DNA of 46,300 bases from Octopus sinensis (Eukaryota). The notes under the pieces were generated by a model. That model was not told where the DNA came from. It saw nothing but the letters and a program-made list of their open reading frames with translations, and ran no database searches. Positions 15,762-42,450 of the stretch are shown piece by piece; position 1 is the stretch's first letter, and each line of letters starts with the position of its first letter. Location: contig NW_021834571.1 in assembly GCF_006345805.1 (NCBI RefSeq), positions 1 to 46,300 on the forward strand, written 5' to 3'. Position numbers and translations under genes: made by a program.

Positions 15762-16710
15762 GTAGGTTGTTCCGAAAATAATGGCCGATTTCAGAAACAT
15801 AATTTTATTCAGGAAAATTAACAATAGAAATGCTTTGATTAGTCAAAGTATGAGCCGTAGACATCTATGCATCTCTGCCATCGATTAACGAGATTATTCA
15901 TGCCCCGTTGATAAAAACTTATTGGCTTTGATGCTAAGAAATCTTTGAATATTATGTCTACCTTTGGTTTGGACCTGAAAGTTTTATCACTTACAATCGT
16001 GTTTAAATGCTTTAAAAATGATATTCAGTGGGTGAAAGATCAGGAGAATATGGAGGCTGTGGTAACGTCTACTATTCTAAATCTGTGAGTTTCTGCAGCG
16101 TCATTCTTGCAACATGTAGCTTTGCATTATCGTGGAGTAGAATTGGGCCACGCCGATTCATCAATGCAGGTCTCCTTTTTGCAAGTGAACATGCATTTCA
16201 GTGCATTGATTGCAGCAAACGTTTGTTGTAATGTCTTAATTGGTTTCCAGAAATCTGTAATGGACAACACCAATTGCAGAACACCAGACAGTCACCATAA
16301 TCTTTTGCTGATGCAACTTTGGCTTTGAGAAATGTTTGGGGAACTCATCATGGTCAAGCCATTGACCTGATCGTTTATGGTTATCAAAAAGGACCCACTT
16401 TTCGTCCCAAGTGACCATTCGGTCAAGAAAAAGTGTTTCATTGGTGTTTCGCAGAAAGAGCATCGAGCACACTTCAAAACGCCTAACTTTTTGATTTTCA
16501 TTAAGCTCATGCGGTACCCACTTATCGAGCTTTTCACCTTACCAATCTTCTACAGATTGCGTGAGACCGTTGCAATACCGACACCAACTGCCTGAGACAT
16601 TTCTCTGACACTTTGACGTAGGTTTTTGTTCAACAACTACTTTCAGCTGTTCATTGTCAAGGCTGCATAACCGTTCTCTACCTTCTTCATCTATGCTTGA
16701 AGGATGTTTG
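15762..16710 (-). mobile_element. Mariner DNA transposon remnant (transposase pseudogene with one terminal inverted repeat)
   Basis: Minus strand reads KLDKWVPHELNENQKVRRFEVCSMLFLRN..VTWDEKWVLFDN..LLHDNA..LPQPPYSPDLSPTEYHF..RWQRCIDVYGSYFD*, with the stop at 15839-15841. 34 residues separate the HDN Asp from the third catalytic position. Internal stops and frameshifts are present. Hsmar1-like TIR GTAGGTTGTTCCGAAAATAATGGCCGATTT at 15762, next to a TA; the other end is missing. Confidence 0.93.
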
Positions 16711-17679: not shown

Positions 17680-17711
17680 TATTATTATTATTAATAATAA
17701 TAATAATAATA

Positions 17712-17779
<68 letters not shown>

Positions 17780-17781
<2 letters not shown>

Positions 17782-18073
17782 GAAATAGAGGTAACCAGAA
17801 TGTGGAATCTAAAAACAGAAACAATTCCTATCATAGTAGGTGCATTAGGCATGATAAAAAAATATTCAGACAAATACATAACAAAAACACCAGGACTTAC
17901 AAACACATATAACATACAGAAAATTGCACTACTAGGCACTGCACACATCCTACGCAGAACACTTTCCATACAATAACCATCAGAGCATCACAACAAATCA
18001 CAGCACATACCCAAGGCACACAGAGCTGCGCACGGTAGTGAAGTGAAAGCACGCTATAAAAGTAAAACTACTG
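17780..18073 (+). mobile_element. R4/Dong-like 3' fragment in (TAA)n
   Basis: Encodes EIEVTRMWNLKTETIPIIVGALG...QKIALLGTAHILRRTLSIQ plus the same 3'UTR as the 34541 and 36502 copies; (TAA)n on both sides. Confidence 0.92.
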
Positions 18074-18095
18074 AATAATAATAATAATAATAATA

Positions 18096-18127
<32 letters not shown>

Positions 18128-18209
18128 TAATAATAATAATAATGATAATATAATAATAATAATAATAATAATATAATAATAATAATAATAATATAATAAT
18201 ATAATAATG

Positions 18210-18240
<31 letters not shown>

Positions 18241-18242
<2 letters not shown>

Positions 18243-18535
18243 GAAATAGAGGTAGGTAACCAGAATGTGGAATCTAAAAACAGAAACAATTCCTATCATA
18301 GTAGGTGCATTAGGCATGATAAAAAAATATTCAGACAAATACATAACAAAAACACCAGGACTTACAAACACATATAACATACAGAAAATTGCACTACTAG
18401 GCACTGCACACATCCTACGCAGAACACTTTCCATACAATAACCATCAGAGCATCACAACAAATCACAGCACATACCCAAGGCACACAGAGCTGCGCACGG
18501 TAGTGAAGTGAAAGCACGCTATAAAAGTAAAACTA

Positions 18536-18593: not shown

Positions 18594-18637
18594 TAATAAT
18601 AATAATAATAATGATAATAATAATAATAATAATAATA

Positions 18638-18679
<42 letters not shown>

Positions 18680-18681
<2 letters not shown>

Positions 18682-18818
18682 AGGAAGAATTTGGAGCATG
18701 AGAGCATTAAGGGTCGTGCCTATAATAATTGGTGCGTTGGGAACAGTAAGCCAAAATATAGACCATTGGTTGAGGGAGATTGAAATAGAATGCCCGGTAG
18801 AGCTCCTACAAAATAATT
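18680..18818 (+). mobile_element. 3' fragment of a second RLE retrotransposon family, after (TAA)n
   Basis: [44 protein letters not shown], a typical RLE C-terminus; cut off by a SINE on the right. Confidence 0.8.
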
Positions 18819-18837
18819 GCCTCTTACTTGATTCAGT

Positions 18838-19205
18838 TAGTTGACTGCGGCCATGCTGGAGCACCGCCTTTAGTCGAGAAAATCGAACCCAGGTTTTATT
18901 ATTTGTAAGCCTAGTACTTATTCTATCGGTTTCTTTTGCCGAACTGCTAAGTTACGGGGACGTAAACACACCACCATCGGTTGTCAAGCGATGTTGGGAA
19001 GATAAACACAGACACACGAACATATACACACGCATTCATATATAGATACATATATACGACGAGCTTCTTTCAGTTTCCGTCTACCAAATCCACTCACAAG
19101 GCTTTAGTCGGCTTGATGCTATAGTAGAAGACACTTGCCCAAGGAGCCACGCAGTGGGACTGAACCCGGAACCATGTGTTTGGTAAGCAAGCGACTTACA
19201 ATACA
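18838..19205 (-). mobile_element. SINE family B
   Basis: Colinear with 6571-6950. Confidence 0.9.
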
Positions 19206-19265: not shown

Positions 19266-19624
19266 ATATATGTATATATGGACAGATATACAGAGATAAT
19301 AGATAGATAGGAAGGAAGGGAAAATAGAGAGACAGGGAGACAGGGAGAGAGAGACAGGAAGAGAGAGAGAGAGAGAGAGAGAGAGGAAGAGAGAGAGAGA
19401 GAGACAGGAAGAGAGAGAGAGAGGAGAGCAGGAGAGCTTTTAGCGCCTACAGTTCTTCTTGTGAAACCTCAAGTGTATCCTATTCGTTTCGCAATCGTGT
19501 CATCAAACCAAATTCCTATCTTGTCAGCGACAGAAGACAGTTGGTAGCTGTTGCTGCAGCAACGGCAACGGTAGCAGCAGTAGCAGCAGTTGTAGCCGTA
19601 GCGGCGACAATGACATGCACCAGT

Positions 19625-20460
19625 TACATCATCACCGCAGCCACCACCACCACCACCACCACACCACCACCACCACCACCACCACCACCACCACCTTCAG
19701 TCGAATGTTTATGATCCTCATTGTTACCAACATCCCCCGCCACCACTAACACTACCACCACCACCACCAGCATCAGCCCCACCACCAGCACCACCGCCAC
19801 CACCAGCACCACCGCCACCACCAGCACCAGCACCACCACCAGCACACCACCACCACCACCACCACCACCACCACCACACCACCAACCACCACCACCTTCA
19901 GTCGAATGTTTATGATCCTCGTTGTTACCAACATCCCCCGCCACCACTAACACTACCACCACCACCACCACCAGCATCAGCCCCACCACCAGCACCACCG
20001 CCACCACCAGCACCAGCACCACCATCACCACCACCACCACCACCACCACCACCTTCAGTCGAATGTTTATGATCCTCATTGTTACCAACATCACCCGCCA
20101 CCACTAACACTACCACCACCACCACCACCAGCATCAGCCCCACCACCAGCACCACCGCCACCACCAGCACCAGCACCACCACCAGCACCACCAGCACCAC
20201 CATCACCACCATCACCACCATCACCACCACCTTCAGTCGAATGTTTATGATCCTCATTGTTACCAACATCCCCCGCCACCACTAACACTACCACCACCAC
20301 CACCACCAGCATCAGCCCAACCACCAGCACCACCGCCACCACCAGCACCAGCATCAGCACCAGCACCACCATCACCACCACCACCACCACCACCACCACC
20401 TTCAGTAGAATGTTCATCATCCTCATTGTTACCAGCATCCACCGCCACCACTAACACTTA
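19625..20460. repeat. Compound tandem repeat, 5 units of about 157-201 bp on a (CCA)n backbone
   Basis: The unique anchor ttcagtcgaatgtttatgatcctcattgttaccaacatcccccgccaccactaacact recurs at 19696, 19897, 20054, 20232 and 20401. Confidence 0.92.
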
Positions 20461-23618: not shown

Positions 23619-24622
23619 ACAGCAGCAACAACAACTGGTACTGATCGACATTTCTCCCCTATTCCACTCACACGTGAAAACGGTTCGATTGGATTTATTT
23701 CGCTGCAATCTAAATTCACATTTGAGAATGAAATTAACAGTTGTATTATAATTTGTTCAGCGCCCTGTTTTCTCGTCCAATATCTTCAAGGACAATATCC
23801 TCCACCGACCACCACCAATGCTAATGGAATTACTACAACTATCGCCCCGCGAAGCTGTCCCCAACATTATCACAAAGATCATTGACCGGTCACTCAACCT
23901 ACAAGAATTACAATAGCAGCTGATTTTTCTTTAACAAACTGCTTCTGGGGAATTTCGCCGTAAACAAAAATTCGCCATAAAAAAATTAAATTTCAAAGAA
24001 TCCAACAAAATTAGCTGTTTTCTTAAAATGGCAACTTCATCAACTATCCTACCAATTAGAGAAAGGTGATTTCTTTACAATGAGTTCGTGTACGTATTTA
24101 CGGCTTGCTTGTGTGCCTCCTTTGCGAGGAAATTTTCCACGGCAAATTTTCCGGTGAAAAAAATGTTTGCGGCAGATATTTCGAACACGCAAATAACCAT
24201 CTACCATCTTTGGACAATGAAGATTATGAAGTAATCAAACTAGGAAAGCTCACGGCTGGAACGTCTTTGATTATAGACACCTTCGATCAAAAAAGTCCTG
24301 CGACTAAATAACATAAAAGTGATATTAAACGGTCGTTAGTTGTGCTAAAACTAGCAGAGAAATTTTCTTAAAATCATACACTACCGTCTTAAAAAATGAA
24401 GGACCCATCACAGGATGGTCATATCCGCAAAGGCGTTGGTTTAAAGTCTGCTTAATGAGGACTGTTCTGGAGCTAAACAAAACCGACAGTAACTGGTTGT
24501 TTATTAATCAAATACGGATTATTGAAAAGTAAAGCCGTCTGCAACGATATTTGACGTTGATATTTAAGAATTCCCATGTATGCATGTATATCTACATATA
24601 TATGTCGGTATGTACATATATG

Positions 24623-24857
24623 CGAAGGCGGCAAGATGGCAGAATCGTTAGCGCGCTGGACGAAATGTTTAACGGTATTTCGTCTGCCGTTGCGTTCTGA
24701 GTTCAAATTCCGCCGAGGTGGACTTTGCCTTTCATCCTTTCCGAGTCGATAAATTAAGTACCAGTTACGCACTGGGGTCGATATAATCGACGTAATCCGT
24801 TTGTCTGTCTTTATTTGTCGCCTCTGTGTTTAGCCCCTTGTGGGTAGTAAAGAAATA
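24623..24857 (+). mobile_element. tRNA-derived SINE family A, monomer with a 16-bp TSD
   Basis: A box TGGCAGAATCG, B box GAGTTCAAATTCC; flanked by ggtatgtacatatatg at 24607-24622 and 24858-24873. Confidence 0.92.
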
Positions 24858-37389: not shown

Positions 37390-38017
37390 TGTCTGGTACA
37401 ATATTTTATTGACCCCGGTGTGAAGAAGAAGGCAAAGTTGATCTCGGCGAATTAAAACCTTGTAAATCATGAAGCTGTGGTGATGAGGATAAACGGTGAC
37501 GACGACGGCGGCGGTGGTGGTGATGACGATGATGATGATGATGATGATGATAGGAGTAGTAGTGGTGGTAGATCTGATGGTAAAGACGGTGATGTTGATG
37601 ATGATGACGATGACGACGATGTTGATGGTGATGATGATGATGATGATGATGATGATGACGATGATTATAGTTATGGTGGTAACAATGATGGCCATGAAAG
37701 TGATGCTGGTGACCAAGATGACGGCGACGACGACGATGTTCATGATGATGATGACGACGATGATGATGATGATGATGATAATGATGCAACAACACCAGGT
37801 TTTATCCTTCAGCCATTACCTCTACAACTCGACCACCCCCCTAACTCCACCTCCACGTCCGACCTCTACCTCCTCCTCTTCTGAAATAACCCCGATTCCC
37901 TTCCTCTTCAGCACTTGTTATGATGGTCTGCACCCTGGTTACAACAGCAACACACCACCACCCTCCACCACTCACGCAACAACAACAACAAAAACAAAAA
38001 CAAAAAACTACTACTAT

Positions 38018-38059
<42 letters not shown>

Positions 38060-39000
38060 ATCCACCACCGCCACCACATACTACTACTACCACAGCAACT
38101 ACTACTACTATTGCGATAGCAACAACAATGATAATAACAATAACGAGAAGAACAAGAACAACAACAATTACACTACCACCACCATCACCACCACTCCTAC
38201 TACTACTGCTGCTACTACTTTTATTACTCCCGCCACCCCCACTTTTAACGCTCATCACTCGCATCACTTTCATTCACGCCAACATACACACACATACTCA
38301 CTCATATATTCTCAACCTCATTTATATATTCACACACATACCCTCATACACACATACATACGCATTCGGCTCCCACCCACTTACGCATAAACAAGTGCGC
38401 GCACACATACACACACACACACAAATACACACACATTCGGCCCCCTCCTTACTCATAAACACACGCGCACACATGCTCACACGCGCTCACCAATACACAC
38501 ACTCTCTGTCTCTCACACATTCTCATAAACACGCGCGGATTCGCACACACATGCACACACTCCCACACACGGACTTCTAAACGCGCGAATATACACTCAT
38601 ATACTCACACGCACTTACACACACATACACACATACACATATACGCACACACACACACACACACACACACACCACACACACTCTGTCATACATAAACATT
38701 CATACACACGCGCGGATGCACACACAACCTCTTTCTCTCTCATACACACACTCACAAACTCTCTCACACACGCACTTTTAAACACGCGCGCATACACACA
38801 CACATACTCACACGTAGTCATCTACACACACACCACACACACACTCTTTCTCTCTCGATCTCTCGCACACACATACACATGCGCATACACACACACTCTC
38901 TCTCTCATGCACATATTCGTAAACACGCACCTATACACACGCACAGTCACCGATAAACAGACACACACACGCACTCACACACACATTTACTTACACAAGT
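37390..39000. repeat. (GAT)n, (CTA)n and (CA)n low-complexity block
   Basis: Seen directly. Confidence 0.9.
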
Positions 39001-39004
39001 AGAC

Positions 39005-39130
39005 CCTCCCCTCCTCCCCCGCCTCACTCCCATTCCGCCCTCCCCCGCCTTGCTTACTCCAATACGTAACGGTTCTGTGGCGGCCTCCACCAAAATAGCA
39101 TTCAACTGGTTGCCACGGTTCCAGTGAGCA
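39005..39130 (+). promoter_or_regulatory. Candidate promoter patch (GC boxes, CCAAT, RFX half-site), possibly for the InaF gene
   Basis: Island of unique GC-rich sequence between microsatellites: CCCCGCC/CCGCCC boxes at about 39017, 39035 and 39043; CCAAT at 39059-39063; GTTGCCACGG (X-box half-site) at 39109-39118; a possible weak donor cca|GTGAGC at 39124. Motif inspection only. Confidence 0.35.
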
Positions 39131-39324
39131 ACGCGTGTTGGCGCTTTGTCCTTATTGCACCTTACAAATCGTTGTTGTATTGTTTAAGATTCGAACCAAA
39201 CATAATATTTTATGGTCCGATTCCACCACTCAGAACAAACAATCAAAATAAGGGAACCAACTGGATTTTTTTAACCACACGAAACTTTCCATATCTAATC
39301 AATACTTCTTTCAGTATCTATCTA

Positions 39325-39377
<53 letters not shown>

Positions 39378-39713
39378 GTCTATCTATCTATTTGTCTGTT
39401 TGTCTGTCTATCTGTCTGCCTGCCTGACTGACTGTGTGTCCCTCTCTCTCTCTCTCTCCGTCTCTCTATTTGTCATTGTGTCTGCCTGTCAGTCTGTCTG
39501 TTTACCTACGTGCCTACCTACCTACCTACATACCTACCTAACTATCTATTTATCTATCGTTCGATCGATCTACCTGTCTGTCTACCTGTCTATCGGTCTG
39601 TCTGTGTGTCGGTCTGTTTACCTTTCTCCTTCTCCCCACCTACATATCTCCATACCTACCTATCACCTTTTCTGTCTATCTACTTATCTATCTATCCATC
39701 AGTCTGTCAGTCA

Positions 39714-39769
<56 letters not shown>

Positions 39770-41044
39770 GTCTATCTATCTGTCTATCTATCTATCTATC
39801 TATCTACCAACCAACATACCTACCTAACACATACACATACACACACACACACACATATATATATAATGTACACGAATTGTTCATGAGTGTATACACACTC
39901 ACACACGCACGCAAGTATATTTACAAAATTACGCTGTTTCCGTCTACTTTCACTTTCCCATCTATTAATTTCGTCTTCGTTTCTTCGTCTTTTATTCCGA
40001 TTGTTGCGTTTAATTATCTATCTTTCATCGTTCTTTCCCAATCTTTTCTCCCCCCCCTTTCCTTTCTTCATTCATTCATTCATTTATTTGTTCCTTTCAT
40101 TTTTTTCACTCTTTCTTTCCTTATCATCAGAATTTATATATAAAAAAAAGATAACTCTCCCCAAAACAAAAACATTCTTCTTTCATTTTGTTTTTATTTT
40201 TTCGTTTCTTACATCTTATTGTTGCTGTTGTTTACACCAGCGCAATAGCTCTGATCGAGCAGATCTGTGATCAAAACCGTTCCTATCGTGGCCAACTATT
40301 CTCATACCATTTTAGGAGTGTATAGAACTGCATCAACTAATGTGTTTTTCCTTGTAAAAAGCAGAACAAAAACCACTAGAGTGTTACGAATTACAGAAAT
40401 TTGGCTGCTCTTTCTAACAAGTTGATTAACCACATAGCGGCATAGTTGGTTTGCGTTAGCGTTGTTGTTTACATACATATTTACGTAAGTACATACATAC
40501 ATATATATACATATGTACATACATTTATATATATAAACATATATCTATGTACATCCGTACATACATATAAACGTACATACATACATATACACATTTTTAC
40601 ATATTTACAAATATATATATATATACATACACACATACATACACACTTATTATACACATACGCATAAATACATCTATACACACACCCACGTACACACATA
40701 CACACACATACACATACATACATATATATATATATATATTCCCTCGCTCCAAGTTTTTGTCATAGTGTCTTCTTTACATCAATAATTTTTTAAAAATCTA
40801 GAGAGAGAAAATAAAAGAATTCCAACTTAGATATAAGACACCAAATTTTAGGGGCAGTTATACAGTCTCTTATGACGACCCCTGTAATTGCTTGAAACTT
40901 ATTCAAGCTCCCTCTAAGTCCAAACCCTTACAGCAGACCCCAGCAAGATTTGAATTCGGAACGTAAAGGGCACTAAAATATTTTGTAAACATTGACACAA
41001 GGATTATAAATTTCATAGAAACATCACACACATCGTTCATCCTT

Positions 41045-41086
<42 letters not shown>

Positions 41087-41116
41087 AATAATAATAGTAA
41101 TAATAATAATAATAAT

Positions 41117-41176
<60 letters not shown>

Positions 41177-41471
41177 TATTAATAAAGTACATTTACAATT
41201 TAGTATATGCTGTTTGGCTCCTTCCTCTCACCTTCCCCAGTTCCTCGTTAAGGGTTTTGCTTTTTTTTCTTTCTTTTTTTCTCTTCTTCCGCTCGCTTAC
41301 TAGTTTCTTCCCCCTCCCTTGCACATTACCCTCAAACCACCACCACCACCACCACCACTACCATTGCCTTGATTCATTCATTCAGAAACCGCTTTCACCC
41401 GTAAAAAAATCACCAAAACGGCACCATTTAAAACGAAATCCTACACAACGGCAGCAACACGGAACAAACGC

Positions 41472-41726
41472 ATGGAGAAACGTGAACACGACATGTCGGC
41501 AGCTTCGCAATACTTTACGGATACTGTTGTAACTTTGAAATTTGAAGAGAAGATTTCGGCCAAGACAAAACGAACGATGACAAGGCTGGCCACTGTCATT
41601 GCTTACATTTGCTCCGTGTCTTTACCGGCATTTATTCTAGCCGTTTACTATATTTCGTTTTGGAACCACGAATACCCGGAGCGTATTGCTCGAAGACCAC
41701 CCGAGCCTTCGACGACAACTTTGTAA
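41472..41726 (+). CDS. inaF: InaF-motif single-pass membrane microprotein (84 aa), InaF/INAFM1/INAFM2 family
   Basis: ATG at 41472, TAA at 41724-41726, no low-complexity sequence, in-frame TGA upstream at 41370. The segment [38 protein letters not shown] matches the InaF motif as I recall it from INAFM2 ([38 protein letters not shown]): a basic juxtamembrane stretch, one hydrophobic helix, then YY..W. The family is recognised; exact orthology is not established. Confidence 0.9.
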
Positions 41727-41757
41727 AATTAATTTTGAAAGAAGATTGCTGTGAAGG

Positions 41758-41789
<32 letters not shown>

Positions 41790-41940
41790 GTATATATATA
41801 TATGTATATGAAGAAAAGAATATGAAATAGCCACTTATATATATATACATATATACATATATATATACATACATATGTTTAAGTATATGTATATATGTAT
41901 ATATATATACATACATATATACTTACATACATACACACAC

Positions 41941-41990
<50 letters not shown>

Positions 41991-42450
41991 GTGTGTGTGT
42001 GTGTATATGTATATATGTTTGGGGTCCGTGAAGGAAACCTGATAGTTTTTAAGTGAATATACTTTAAAAACCAGTGAGTTTCCCTGTTGGACGCTATATA
42101 CACATACATACATACATACATACATACATACATACATACATGCATACATACATACATGCATGCATACATACATACATACATACATACATATACATGCATA
42201 CATAAACACAAACATATTCATACATTTATATAAATGCATATACACACATCTACATATTCATAAGTATGTGTTTTGTGTGTGTGTGTGTGGGCACATAGTT
42301 TTATTGATATTGAGCAGAAGTAACAGAGTGACTCAAAGGCCAAACTCTCGGTCCTTGGGTCACTCTGTTACTTCTGCTAAATATTAATAAAAATATATAT
42401 ATACTCATATTTTGAGTTCTATTATCCCTGTTTGCAGAGACACCTATACT

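What the first reader, a model, noticed from the sequence alone, without database searches (positions are those of the whole stretch)
41472..41726. A lone InaF-family microprotein gene: candidate TRP-channel partner for cephalopod phototransduction
Seen: an intact, non-repetitive 84-aa ORF with a full InaF motif, the only clear host gene in 46 kb. Established: Drosophila InaF proteins bind TRP and are needed for normal TRP levels in rhabdomeric photoreceptors, and cephalopod eyes are also rhabdomeric with a Gq/PLC/TRP cascade. Inference: this may be an uncharacterised TRP regulator in the retina or in dermal light sensing. It is small enough to be missed by annotation. The cytosolic stretch before the helix ([13 protein letters not shown]) diverges from the NKKWVRLAT form I recall for vertebrate INAFM2.
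Basis: partly seen in the sequence, partly recalled or inferred. Interest (0 to 1): 0.72.

Follow-up and report, generated by a model that had tools for sequence, protein, structure and literature searches.

The report
Conserved cephalopod InaF-motif microprotein gene
The 84-codon reading frame is a real gene, kept under strong purifying selection, for a tiny single-pass membrane protein of the known InaF/INAFM family; its proposed role as a TRP-channel partner in cephalopod vision is plausible but untested.

Summary
Window 41472..41726 (+) is an intact ATG-to-TAA ORF of 84 codons. It matches Pfam PF15018 (InaF-motif, "TRP-interacting helix") at E = 4.8e-15, 55.7 bits against a cutoff of 21.8.

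It is a real gene. The cuttlefish Acanthosepion (Sepia) pharaonis has a co-linear 85-codon ortholog with the same MEK start and the same stop position.
- 69 of 84 residues are identical.
- Differences by codon position are 10, 11 and 47.
- Synonymous sites are saturated (pS 0.78) and pN is 0.11, falling to 0.024 over residues 15-69.
- DNA similarity between the two loci is confined to the CDS.

The protein is predicted to have a basic cytosolic N-terminal part, one membrane helix (about residues 40-58) and a 26-residue tail. All nine family-invariant residues are present. There is one copy in the window.

The TRP and phototransduction role rests only on homology: Drosophila INAF-B, 81 aa, binds and stabilises TRP. 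Vertebrate INAFM2/ROME has other roles, and eyeless nematodes carry the family. No expression or interaction data could be obtained.

Verdict: a new, unannotated or mis-modelled member of a known family. Interest is modest.

The parts
41472..41726 (+). Complete coding sequence of the InaF-motif microprotein: 84 codons plus a TAA stop, uninterrupted.
   Evidence: ORF listing and sequence. Pfam PF15018 at E = 4.8e-15. Co-linear 85-codon ortholog in S. pharaonis at L001:11431-11688, with 69 of 84 residues identical, codon-position differences of 10/11/47, pN 0.114 against pS 0.775, and 0 of 1000 permutations as low.
41472..41588 (+). Predicted cytosolic N-terminal part (aa 1-39). Residues 1-14 are variable. 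Residues 15-39 ([25 protein letters not shown]) form a conserved, basic juxtamembrane box.
   Evidence: Residues 15-39 are identical in the cuttlefish except K27R. There are 5 K/R in the 15 residues before the helix and 1 in the 15 after it, which favours N-in by the positive-inside rule. Human INAFM2/ROME is described as N-terminus-in (PMC13012068).
41580..41672 (+). InaF motif as matched by Pfam (aa 37-67).
   Evidence: The family-invariant residues T41, V42, Y45, V49, A53, L56, Y59, Y60 and W64 are all present.
41589..41645 (+). Predicted transmembrane helix (aa 40-58, [19 protein letters not shown]).
   Evidence: This is the best 19-residue Kyte-Doolittle segment, mean 2.16. The AlphaFold2 model has a helix over residues 13-63, with pLDDT about 90 for residues 41-60 and low confidence elsewhere.
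41646..41723 (+). Short C-terminal tail, predicted extracellular or lumenal (aa 59-84). It includes the conserved [11 protein letters not shown] and contains no N-X-S/T sequon.
   Evidence: Read directly from the sequence. Residues 59-69 are identical in the cuttlefish and residues 70-84 are variable.
41370..41372 (+). Nearest upstream in-frame stop (TGA). It limits any N-terminal extension within this exon.
   Evidence: The 285 nt upstream are no more similar to the cuttlefish locus than shuffled sequence is.
41186..41757 (.). Non-repetitive island that holds the gene, bounded by (AAC)n/(AAT)n at 41045-41185 and (AT)n from 41758.
42386..42391 (+). First canonical AATAAA after the stop, 660 nt downstream. 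A weak candidate poly(A) signal.
   Evidence: Pattern search only. It is not conserved: in the cuttlefish ATTAAA and AATAAA lie 12-20 nt after the stop.

Best explanation
This is a functional gene with a single coding exon. It encodes an 84-aa single-pass membrane microprotein of the InaF/INAFM family, orthologous to an 85-aa protein of the cuttlefish S. pharaonis.

Shown here:
- the intact frame;
- the family match;
- strong purifying selection, with conservation confined to the CDS.

Predicted here: one hydrophobic helix carrying the InaF motif, with a basic N-terminal flank.

Inferred mechanism: the protein inserts with its N-terminus in the cytosol. Its InaF-motif helix packs against the transmembrane domain of a TRPC-class channel. 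It acts as a small auxiliary or chaperone-like subunit that stabilises the channel protein, as Drosophila INAF-B (81 aa) does for TRP. The most obvious candidate partner in a cephalopod is the eye-enriched alpha-TRPC.

My estimates: about 0.95 that it is a real, selected InaF-family gene; about 0.45 that it is a TRP(C)-channel partner; about 0.2 that its main role is in phototransduction.
For: Gene reality:
- ORF.
- PF15018 at 55.7 bits against a cutoff of 21.8.
- The only substantial blastn match between the 21.7-kb cuttlefish locus and the 46.3-kb window is the CDS, 227 nt ungapped at 76% identity.
- A translated comparison finds no other conserved exon.
- 69 of 84 aa are identical, with the same MEK start and stop position and one 1-codon indel. 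Differences by codon position are 10/11/47. pS is 0.775 (saturated) and pN 0.114; for residues 15-69 pN is 0.024. None of 1000 random-substitution replicates reached so low a pN/pS.
- CDS identity is 0.75 against a shuffled expectation of 0.55 +/- 0.02, while both flanks sit at the shuffled level.

Architecture:
- Helix at residues 40-58 and the charge bias.
- AF2 helix with pLDDT about 90 over residues 41-60.
- All nine invariant family residues present.

Mechanism by homology:
- INAF-B is an 81-aa single-pass membrane protein. It colocalises and interacts with TRP, the two need each other for stability, and null mutants keep only 5-10% of TRP protein with unchanged mRNA (PMC3433705).
- Mouse INAFM2 was reported in a TRP interactome (cited in PMC13012068).
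- Cephalopods have alpha-TRPC, the clade that contains Drosophila TRPC sequences (TRP-gamma is the one named) and vertebrate TRPC1/4/5. [quoted passage not shown]
Against: - No expression, translation or interaction evidence was obtainable. The exact protein is not in the 15-billion-sequence collection.
- No other cephalopod sequence was available, so selection is measured on a single species pair.
- Two positions that are conserved in at least 90% of aligned family members are changed: W36M and P66H. The basic KK before the helix is partly lost through K35T. This could alter partner binding.
- The family is not specific to vision. It is widespread in nematodes, and vertebrate INAFM2/ROME is reported to bind beta-catenin and to affect development and metastasis.
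- No promoter, transcript ends or conserved poly(A) signal could be defined.
Confidence: 0.5

Rival explanations
1. It is a real InaF-family gene, but its main role has nothing to do with TRP channels or vision. It would act like vertebrate INAFM2/ROME, as a small plasma-membrane protein that modulates developmental or adhesion signalling such as Wnt/beta-catenin. Alternatively it would be a general membrane-protein assembly factor expressed broadly.
For: - phmmer alignments to named vertebrate INAFM2 start around residues 23-25, upstream of the Pfam motif. K27, A30, K31 and T32 are shared with the vertebrate [10 protein letters not shown] box.
- The CDS is uninterrupted, like the single-exon human gene.
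- ROME is reported to bind beta-catenin and to be needed for zebrafish development (PMC13012068).
- The family is common in nematodes, which have no rhabdomeric TRP-based eyes.
Against: - Human ROME has a glycosylated extracellular domain of about 97 aa. This protein has only 26 residues after the helix and no N-X-S/T sequon.
- In size and layout it is much closer to the 81-aa INAF-B.
- The part of ROME that binds beta-catenin is not known to me, so homology of that surface could not be tested.
Confidence: 0.3
2. The ORF is only the last coding exon of a larger protein, as the 282-aa S. pharaonis gene model (CAE1324301.1) implies.
For: - The cuttlefish annotation joins the InaF ORF to upstream exons.
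- In the cuttlefish the frame stays open upstream of the ATG, from L001:11086.
- A pyrimidine-rich tract ending in AG lies about 85 nt upstream of the window's ATG, so a 5' intron is possible.
Against: - In the window an in-frame TGA lies 99 nt upstream.
- The first 197 residues of the cuttlefish model are low-complexity, including translated (TCTA)n, with no Pfam domain.
- Nothing upstream of the shared ATG is conserved at the DNA or protein level.
- Homology begins exactly at the shared M-E-K.
- Other family members are also small proteins with the motif near the N-terminus.
Confidence: 0.05
3. It is a chance ORF, or a recently dead or processed pseudogene copy that happens to remain open.
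For: - The window is full of long spurious ORFs made by microsatellites.
- The gene sits alone among transposon debris.
- No transcript evidence was found.
Against: - Pfam E = 4.8e-15.
- Synonymous sites against the cuttlefish are saturated while the protein core is about 96% identical. Third-position differences dominate, 47 against 10 and 11. None of 1000 permutations came as low.
- Flanks are fully randomised while the CDS is retained from start to stop.
Confidence: 0.02

Closest known systems
Drosophila INAF-B, with INAF-A and INAF-C of the inaF locus
   Same: Both are very small single-pass membrane proteins (81 aa against 84 aa). Both have the InaF motif forming the transmembrane helix and short tails on each side.
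   Different: - The Drosophila locus encodes several InaF-motif proteins (PMC13012068). Here there is one copy in 46 kb.
- Sequence similarity is limited to the motif.
- TRP binding, INAD binding and eye enrichment are shown for the fly protein and are untested here.
- I did not align a fly sequence directly, because none was available among the named hits.
Vertebrate INAFM2 (ROME) and INAFM1
   Same: - The Pfam family is the same.
- The coding sequence is uninterrupted.
- A basic juxtamembrane box precedes the helix: AK..AKT in both.
- Topology is N-in, predicted here and described for ROME.
- phmmer E-values are about 1e-6 to 1e-4.
   Different: - Vertebrate proteins are 100-300 aa with a long glycosylated extracellular tail. 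This one has 26 residues after the helix and no sequon.
- NKKWVR is replaced by KRTMTR.
- P66, in the vertebrate W-x-P, is H here.
S. pharaonis CAE1324301.1 (UniRef A0A812EHY0), 'unnamed protein product'
   Same: It is the ortholog. The last 85 residues are 82% identical to the window protein, with the same start and stop.
   Different: It is annotated as a 282-aa spliced protein whose first 197 residues are low-complexity sequence with no homology. This is probably a mis-model.
Nematode InaF-motif proteins (Trichuris, Trichinella, Romanomermis and others; many named 'Transmembrane protein INAFM2')
   Same: They share the P52 variant (S/C-L/M-P-A) and the F-W-[ND]-x-x-Y segment after the helix. 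Identity over the motif is 56-58%.
   Different: They retain W36 and V37, have longer C-terminal tails, and show no similarity outside the motif.

Membership tests
InaF-motif family (Pfam PF15018, 'TRP-interacting helix') | Match to the family HMM above the curated gathering score. | tested here: met
   55.7 bits against 21.8, E = 4.8e-15, covering 31 of 35 profile positions.
InaF-motif family (Pfam PF15018, 'TRP-interacting helix') | The motif forms the single transmembrane helix of a small single-pass protein. | tested here: met
   There is one hydrophobic segment, residues 40-58, inside the motif at 37-67. AF2 gives a helix with pLDDT about 90 for residues 41-60. This is a prediction only.
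InaF-motif family (Pfam PF15018, 'TRP-interacting helix') | Family-invariant residues of the motif. | tested here: met
   T41, V42, Y45, V49, A53, L56, Y59, Y60 and W64 are invariant in a 44-sequence alignment and all are present. They are also seen in 92 motif instances, where R38-V42 and Y45 were imposed by my selection pattern. Two positions conserved in at least 90% of sequences are not kept: W36M and P66H.
InaF-motif family (Pfam PF15018, 'TRP-interacting helix') | Physical association with a TRP/TRPC channel and mutual stabilisation, the functional definition from Drosophila INAF-B. | not testable with these tools
   This needs co-IP, co-expression or a knockout. No multimer prediction tool or TRP sequence of this species was available.
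InaF-motif family (Pfam PF15018, 'TRP-interacting helix') | Photoreceptor or eye-enriched expression, as for Drosophila inaF. | not testable with these tools
   No transcriptome of the source species was accessible. 'inaf' is absent from the text and supplements of the cephalopod papers searched.
INAFM2 (ROME) orthology group | Conserved pre-helix box, ...[17 protein letters not shown]. | tested here: inconclusive
   K27, A30, K31, T32 and R38-V42 are shared. N33K, K34R, K35T, W36M and V37T differ.
INAFM2 (ROME) orthology group | Long glycosylated extracellular C-terminal domain, about 97 aa in human. | tested here: not met
   Only 26 residues follow the helix and there is no N-X-S/T sequon. 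The ROME description is from PMC13012068.
INAFM2 (ROME) orthology group | Uninterrupted (single-exon) coding sequence. | tested here: met
   The CDS is contiguous in both the window and the cuttlefish. Introns in the UTRs cannot be excluded.

The most novel reading that the evidence does not exclude
This microprotein is the obligatory auxiliary subunit of the light-activated, eye-enriched alpha-TRPC channel of cephalopod rhabdomeric photoreceptors, and perhaps of dermal light sensing. The shared juxtamembrane changes (K35T, W36M, V37T, P66H) would then be lineage-specific co-adaptation to that channel. Adding the protein might be what is needed to express cephalopod light-gated TRP channels functionally in heterologous cells.
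Probability: 0.15. Interest if true: 0.6.

Novelty: new member of a known kind. Interest (0 to 1): 0.3.

Why it matters
It adds a well-supported but unannotated or mis-annotated microprotein gene to cephalopod gene sets, and it corrects a probable mis-model in S. pharaonis.

If the protein does partner with TRPC channels, it gives a concrete, very small candidate to test in cephalopod phototransduction and in heterologous expression of invertebrate TRP channels.

Apart from that it is an expected finding. [quoted passage not shown]

Tried and rejected
- **Mis-registered comparison.** My first codon comparison paired the two ORFs without the 1-codon indel and gave a meaningless dN/dS near 1. 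It was discarded and redone correctly.
- **Single-sequence word-indexed search.** It found nothing. The full HMMER scan and a profile query were needed.
- **Solved structures.** There is no significant match; the best E-value is 0.37 and unrelated.
- **Host species.**
  - Relatives of the retrotransposon ORF are unnamed: a Logan contig from SRR7158634 at 89% identity and a contig of GCA_024449705.1 at 75%.
  - Neither accession appears in the paper library.
  - No window ORF is on record in the gene-position collection.
The 82% identity to a cuttlefish, extending outside the motif, makes a coleoid cephalopod the reasonable inference.
- **Other lophotrochozoan InaF proteins.** None carries a name. 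The named relatives are insects, nematodes, amphioxus and vertebrates.
- **Extra InaF copies or a complex locus like the one in Drosophila.** None found.
- **Synteny or neighbouring conserved exons with the cuttlefish locus.** None found; the remaining hits are microsatellite-derived.
- **C-terminal PDZ ligand.** I considered this because INAF-B binds INAD. The window protein ends in TTL, which would fit a class I ligand. The cuttlefish protein ends in VTH, and the tail is predicted to be extracellular, so I rejected the idea.
- **Bacterial-type promoter and terminator scan.** It is not informative for a eukaryote.
- **Rfam and tRNA scans of the window.** Nothing found.
- **Fold search of a single helix.** Judged meaningless and not run.

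Full report
**1. The observation**

Window 41472..41726 on the + strand is an intact ORF, from ATG to TAA, of 84 codons. The nearest upstream in-frame stop is TGA at 41370-41372, and 41472 is the first possible start after it.

The ORF sits in a non-repetitive island of about 570 bp (about 41186-41757). The island is bounded by (AAC)n/(AAT)n upstream and by long (AT)n and (ACAT)n arrays downstream.

ORF length alone is not evidence in this window, because microsatellites generate many longer spurious ORFs. The family match is evidence. Pfam PF15018 (InaF-motif, 'TRP-interacting helix') scores 55.7 bits against a gathering score of 21.8. E is 4.8e-15, and residues 37-67 cover profile positions 4-34 of 35.

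**2. Is it a real gene?**

A full HMMER scan of 1.84 billion representative proteins gave 101 hits at E <= 1e-3. The best hit, P0001 (E = 2.9e-35, 82% identity), is CAE1324301.1, an 'unnamed protein product' of the cuttlefish Acanthosepion (Sepia) pharaonis.

It is annotated as a 282-aa spliced protein. Its first 197 residues are low-complexity sequence, including a translated (TCTA)n microsatellite. The last 85 residues begin with M-E-K and run to the stop.

I fetched its DNA as L001, from assembly GCA_903632075.3. PMC13402157 confirms that this accession is A. pharaonis.

*DNA similarity is confined to the CDS.*
- The only substantial blastn match between the 21.7-kb cuttlefish locus and the 46.3-kb window is the ORF itself: L001 11449-11675 against window 41487-41713, 76% identity, ungapped.
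- A translated comparison finds no other conserved exon.
- In global alignments the CDS is 0.75 identical against a shuffled expectation of 0.55 +/- 0.02. The 285 nt upstream and 100 nt downstream are indistinguishable from shuffled sequence.

*The substitution pattern is that of a protein under selection.*
- A first, mis-registered comparison is void. The correct codon alignment has one 1-codon indel near the N-terminus.
- 69 of 84 residues are identical.
- Differences by codon position are 10, 11 and 47.
- pS is 0.775, which is saturated, against pN of 0.114.
- In the core, residues 15-69, pN is 0.024: three nonsynonymous differences (Nd 3.0) in 55 codons.
- None of 1000 random-substitution replicates reached so low a pN/pS.

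The start codon, the stop position and the frame are all conserved across a divergence deep enough to randomise synonymous sites and flanks. This is strong evidence for a functional protein-coding gene whose CDS is complete in this one exon.

**3. Anatomy of the protein**

- The best hydrophobic 19-mer is residues 40-58, [19 protein letters not shown], with a Kyte-Doolittle mean of 2.16.
- The 15 residues before it carry 5 K/R and the 15 after it carry 1. This favours the N-terminus in the cytosol, as described for human INAFM2/ROME (PMC13012068).
- An AlphaFold2 model built on a 44-sequence alignment gives one long helix. It is confident only for about residues 35-62, with pLDDT about 90 for 41-60 and low-confidence tails. 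Mean pLDDT is 64.
- After the helix only 26 residues remain, and they contain no N-glycosylation sequon.
- Between the two cephalopods the conserved block runs from F15 to P69. It therefore includes a juxtamembrane box, [12 protein letters not shown][K/R][11 protein letters not shown], well upstream of the Pfam motif.

**4. Family comparison**

- All nine residues that are invariant in the 44-sequence alignment are present: T41, V42, Y45, V49, A53, L56, Y59, Y60 and W64.
- In a larger set of 92 motif instances, V49, A53, L56, Y59, Y60 and W64 are again invariant. In that set R38-V42 and Y45 were imposed by my selection pattern, so they do not count as a test.
Sequences named INAFM2 read ...[17 protein letters not shown].
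- Both cephalopods have K35T, W36M and V37T, plus I54F and P66H. They share A52P with the trichinellid and mermithid nematodes.
- The sample is dominated by vertebrate INAFM2, so the percentages overstate how universal W36 is. The insect two-motif proteins P0002 and P0003 also lack it.

**5. Copy number and surroundings**

A six-frame scan with a family profile finds only this copy in the window (E = 2.5e-23) and one in the cuttlefish locus.

The other recognisable ORFs and features in the window are:
- a mariner transposase fragment at 16236-16472 on the minus strand (PF01359);
- a zf-RVT retrotransposon fragment at 35627-36136;
- repeated SINE-like units;
- microsatellites and minisatellites.

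There are no Rfam families or tRNAs. 'The only clear host gene in 46 kb' is therefore fair.

**6. Annotation status and host**

- The exact protein is not in the 15-billion-sequence collection.
- A profile search of the 5.8-billion-cluster collection returned 70 PF15018 proteins. They are nematodes, vertebrates and a few unnamed sequences. The only cephalopod among them is the mis-modelled S. pharaonis entry.
- Further look-ups named insects and amphioxus but no mollusc.
- No paper in the library mentions inaF together with cephalopods. The supplements of the Euprymna visual-system atlas do not contain the term.
- This is consistent with the gene being generally missed. I could not check the window's own genome annotation, because that assembly does not seem to be in the collection.
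- I also could not confirm 'octopus' by name. A coleoid cephalopod other than S. pharaonis is the reasonable inference from the 82% identity that extends outside the motif.

**7. Function**

*Established.* Drosophila INAF-B is an 81-aa single-pass membrane protein. It colocalises and interacts with TRP, the two proteins depend on each other for stability, and null mutants retain 5-10% of TRP protein with unchanged mRNA. [quoted passage not shown]

Cephalopods have an alpha-TRPC, in the same clade as Drosophila TRPC sequences (TRP-gamma is the one named) and vertebrate TRPC1/4/5. It is eye-enriched in Sepia officinalis and Octopus maya (PMC13402157).

*Inferred.* The most likely mechanism is that the InaF helix binds the transmembrane domain of a TRPC-class channel and stabilises it.

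*Against over-reading.* The family is widespread in nematodes. Vertebrate INAFM2/ROME is reported as a plasma-membrane glycoprotein that binds beta-catenin and affects development and metastasis. Family membership therefore does not predict a visual role.

My estimates are:
- real, selected InaF-family gene: about 0.95;
- TRP(C) partner: about 0.45;
- mainly phototransduction: about 0.2.

**8. Verdict**

This is a new, unannotated or mis-modelled member of a known family. It is not a new kind of system, and its interest is modest. It is a useful annotation correction and a compact, testable candidate for cephalopod TRP-channel biology.

Noticed in passing
L001:10001-11430 (S. pharaonis CAHIKZ030005407.1, gene model CAE1324301.1): The annotated 282-aa cuttlefish protein joins the genuine 85-aa InaF ORF to 197 residues of low-complexity sequence, including a translated (TCTA)n microsatellite. 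That part has no homology or domain, so it is probably an ab initio mis-model.
   Followed up: partly
window 16236-16472 (-): A fragment of a mariner-type transposase (PF01359 Transposase_1, E = 3.5e-14). It is truncated and not an intact element.
   Followed up: partly
window 35627-36136 (+), also 34946-35401 and the tail of 32278-32739: Pieces of a non-LTR retrotransposon. They include a zf-RVT domain (PF13966) and an RT-like 'GIFQGDTLSPLLF' stretch. The closest relatives are unnamed contigs (89% in Logan SRR7158634, 75% in GCA_024449705.1). More distant relatives, 50-58% identical, are in corals, sea anemones and a sea cucumber.
   Followed up: partly
window 3822-4043, 9044-9262, 24473-24772 (all -): Three copies of a short interspersed repeat. 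Its minus-strand translation reads ...RNW[CY]LIYR.(R/G)KDERQS.PRRNLNS.RNGRRNT.KHF... It looks like a SINE-like family. ARAGORN detects no tRNA in it.
   Followed up: no
window 17691-17969 and 18054-18434 (-); 17746-17976 and 18611-18844 (+): A duplicated segment. Two ORFs begin with the same 59 residues, MESVLRRMCAVPSSAIFCML... The opposite strand encodes ...IPIIVGALG(M/T)..., which resembles the C-terminal tail of retrotransposon ORFs. The copies are separated by homopolymer-codon microsatellites.
   Followed up: no
window 19624-20438 (-): A minisatellite. Three overlapping ORFs repeat the unit ...LVVAGDVGNNEDHKHSTEGGGG... with a period of roughly 170-340 nt.
   Followed up: no
window 38001-42000: A strong negative GC skew, -0.57 at 38-40 kb. 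It comes from strand-asymmetric TCTA/TCTATC-type microsatellites, which translate as SIYLSIYL. The same repeat type lies just upstream of the cuttlefish ortholog (L001 about 11190-11220).
   Followed up: no
P0002 (Phyllotreta striolata, 320 aa) and P0003 (Hylaeus anthracinus, 589 aa): These are the best non-cephalopod hits. They are insect proteins that each carry two InaF motifs in one polypeptide, a different architecture from the single-motif microproteins.
   Followed up: no
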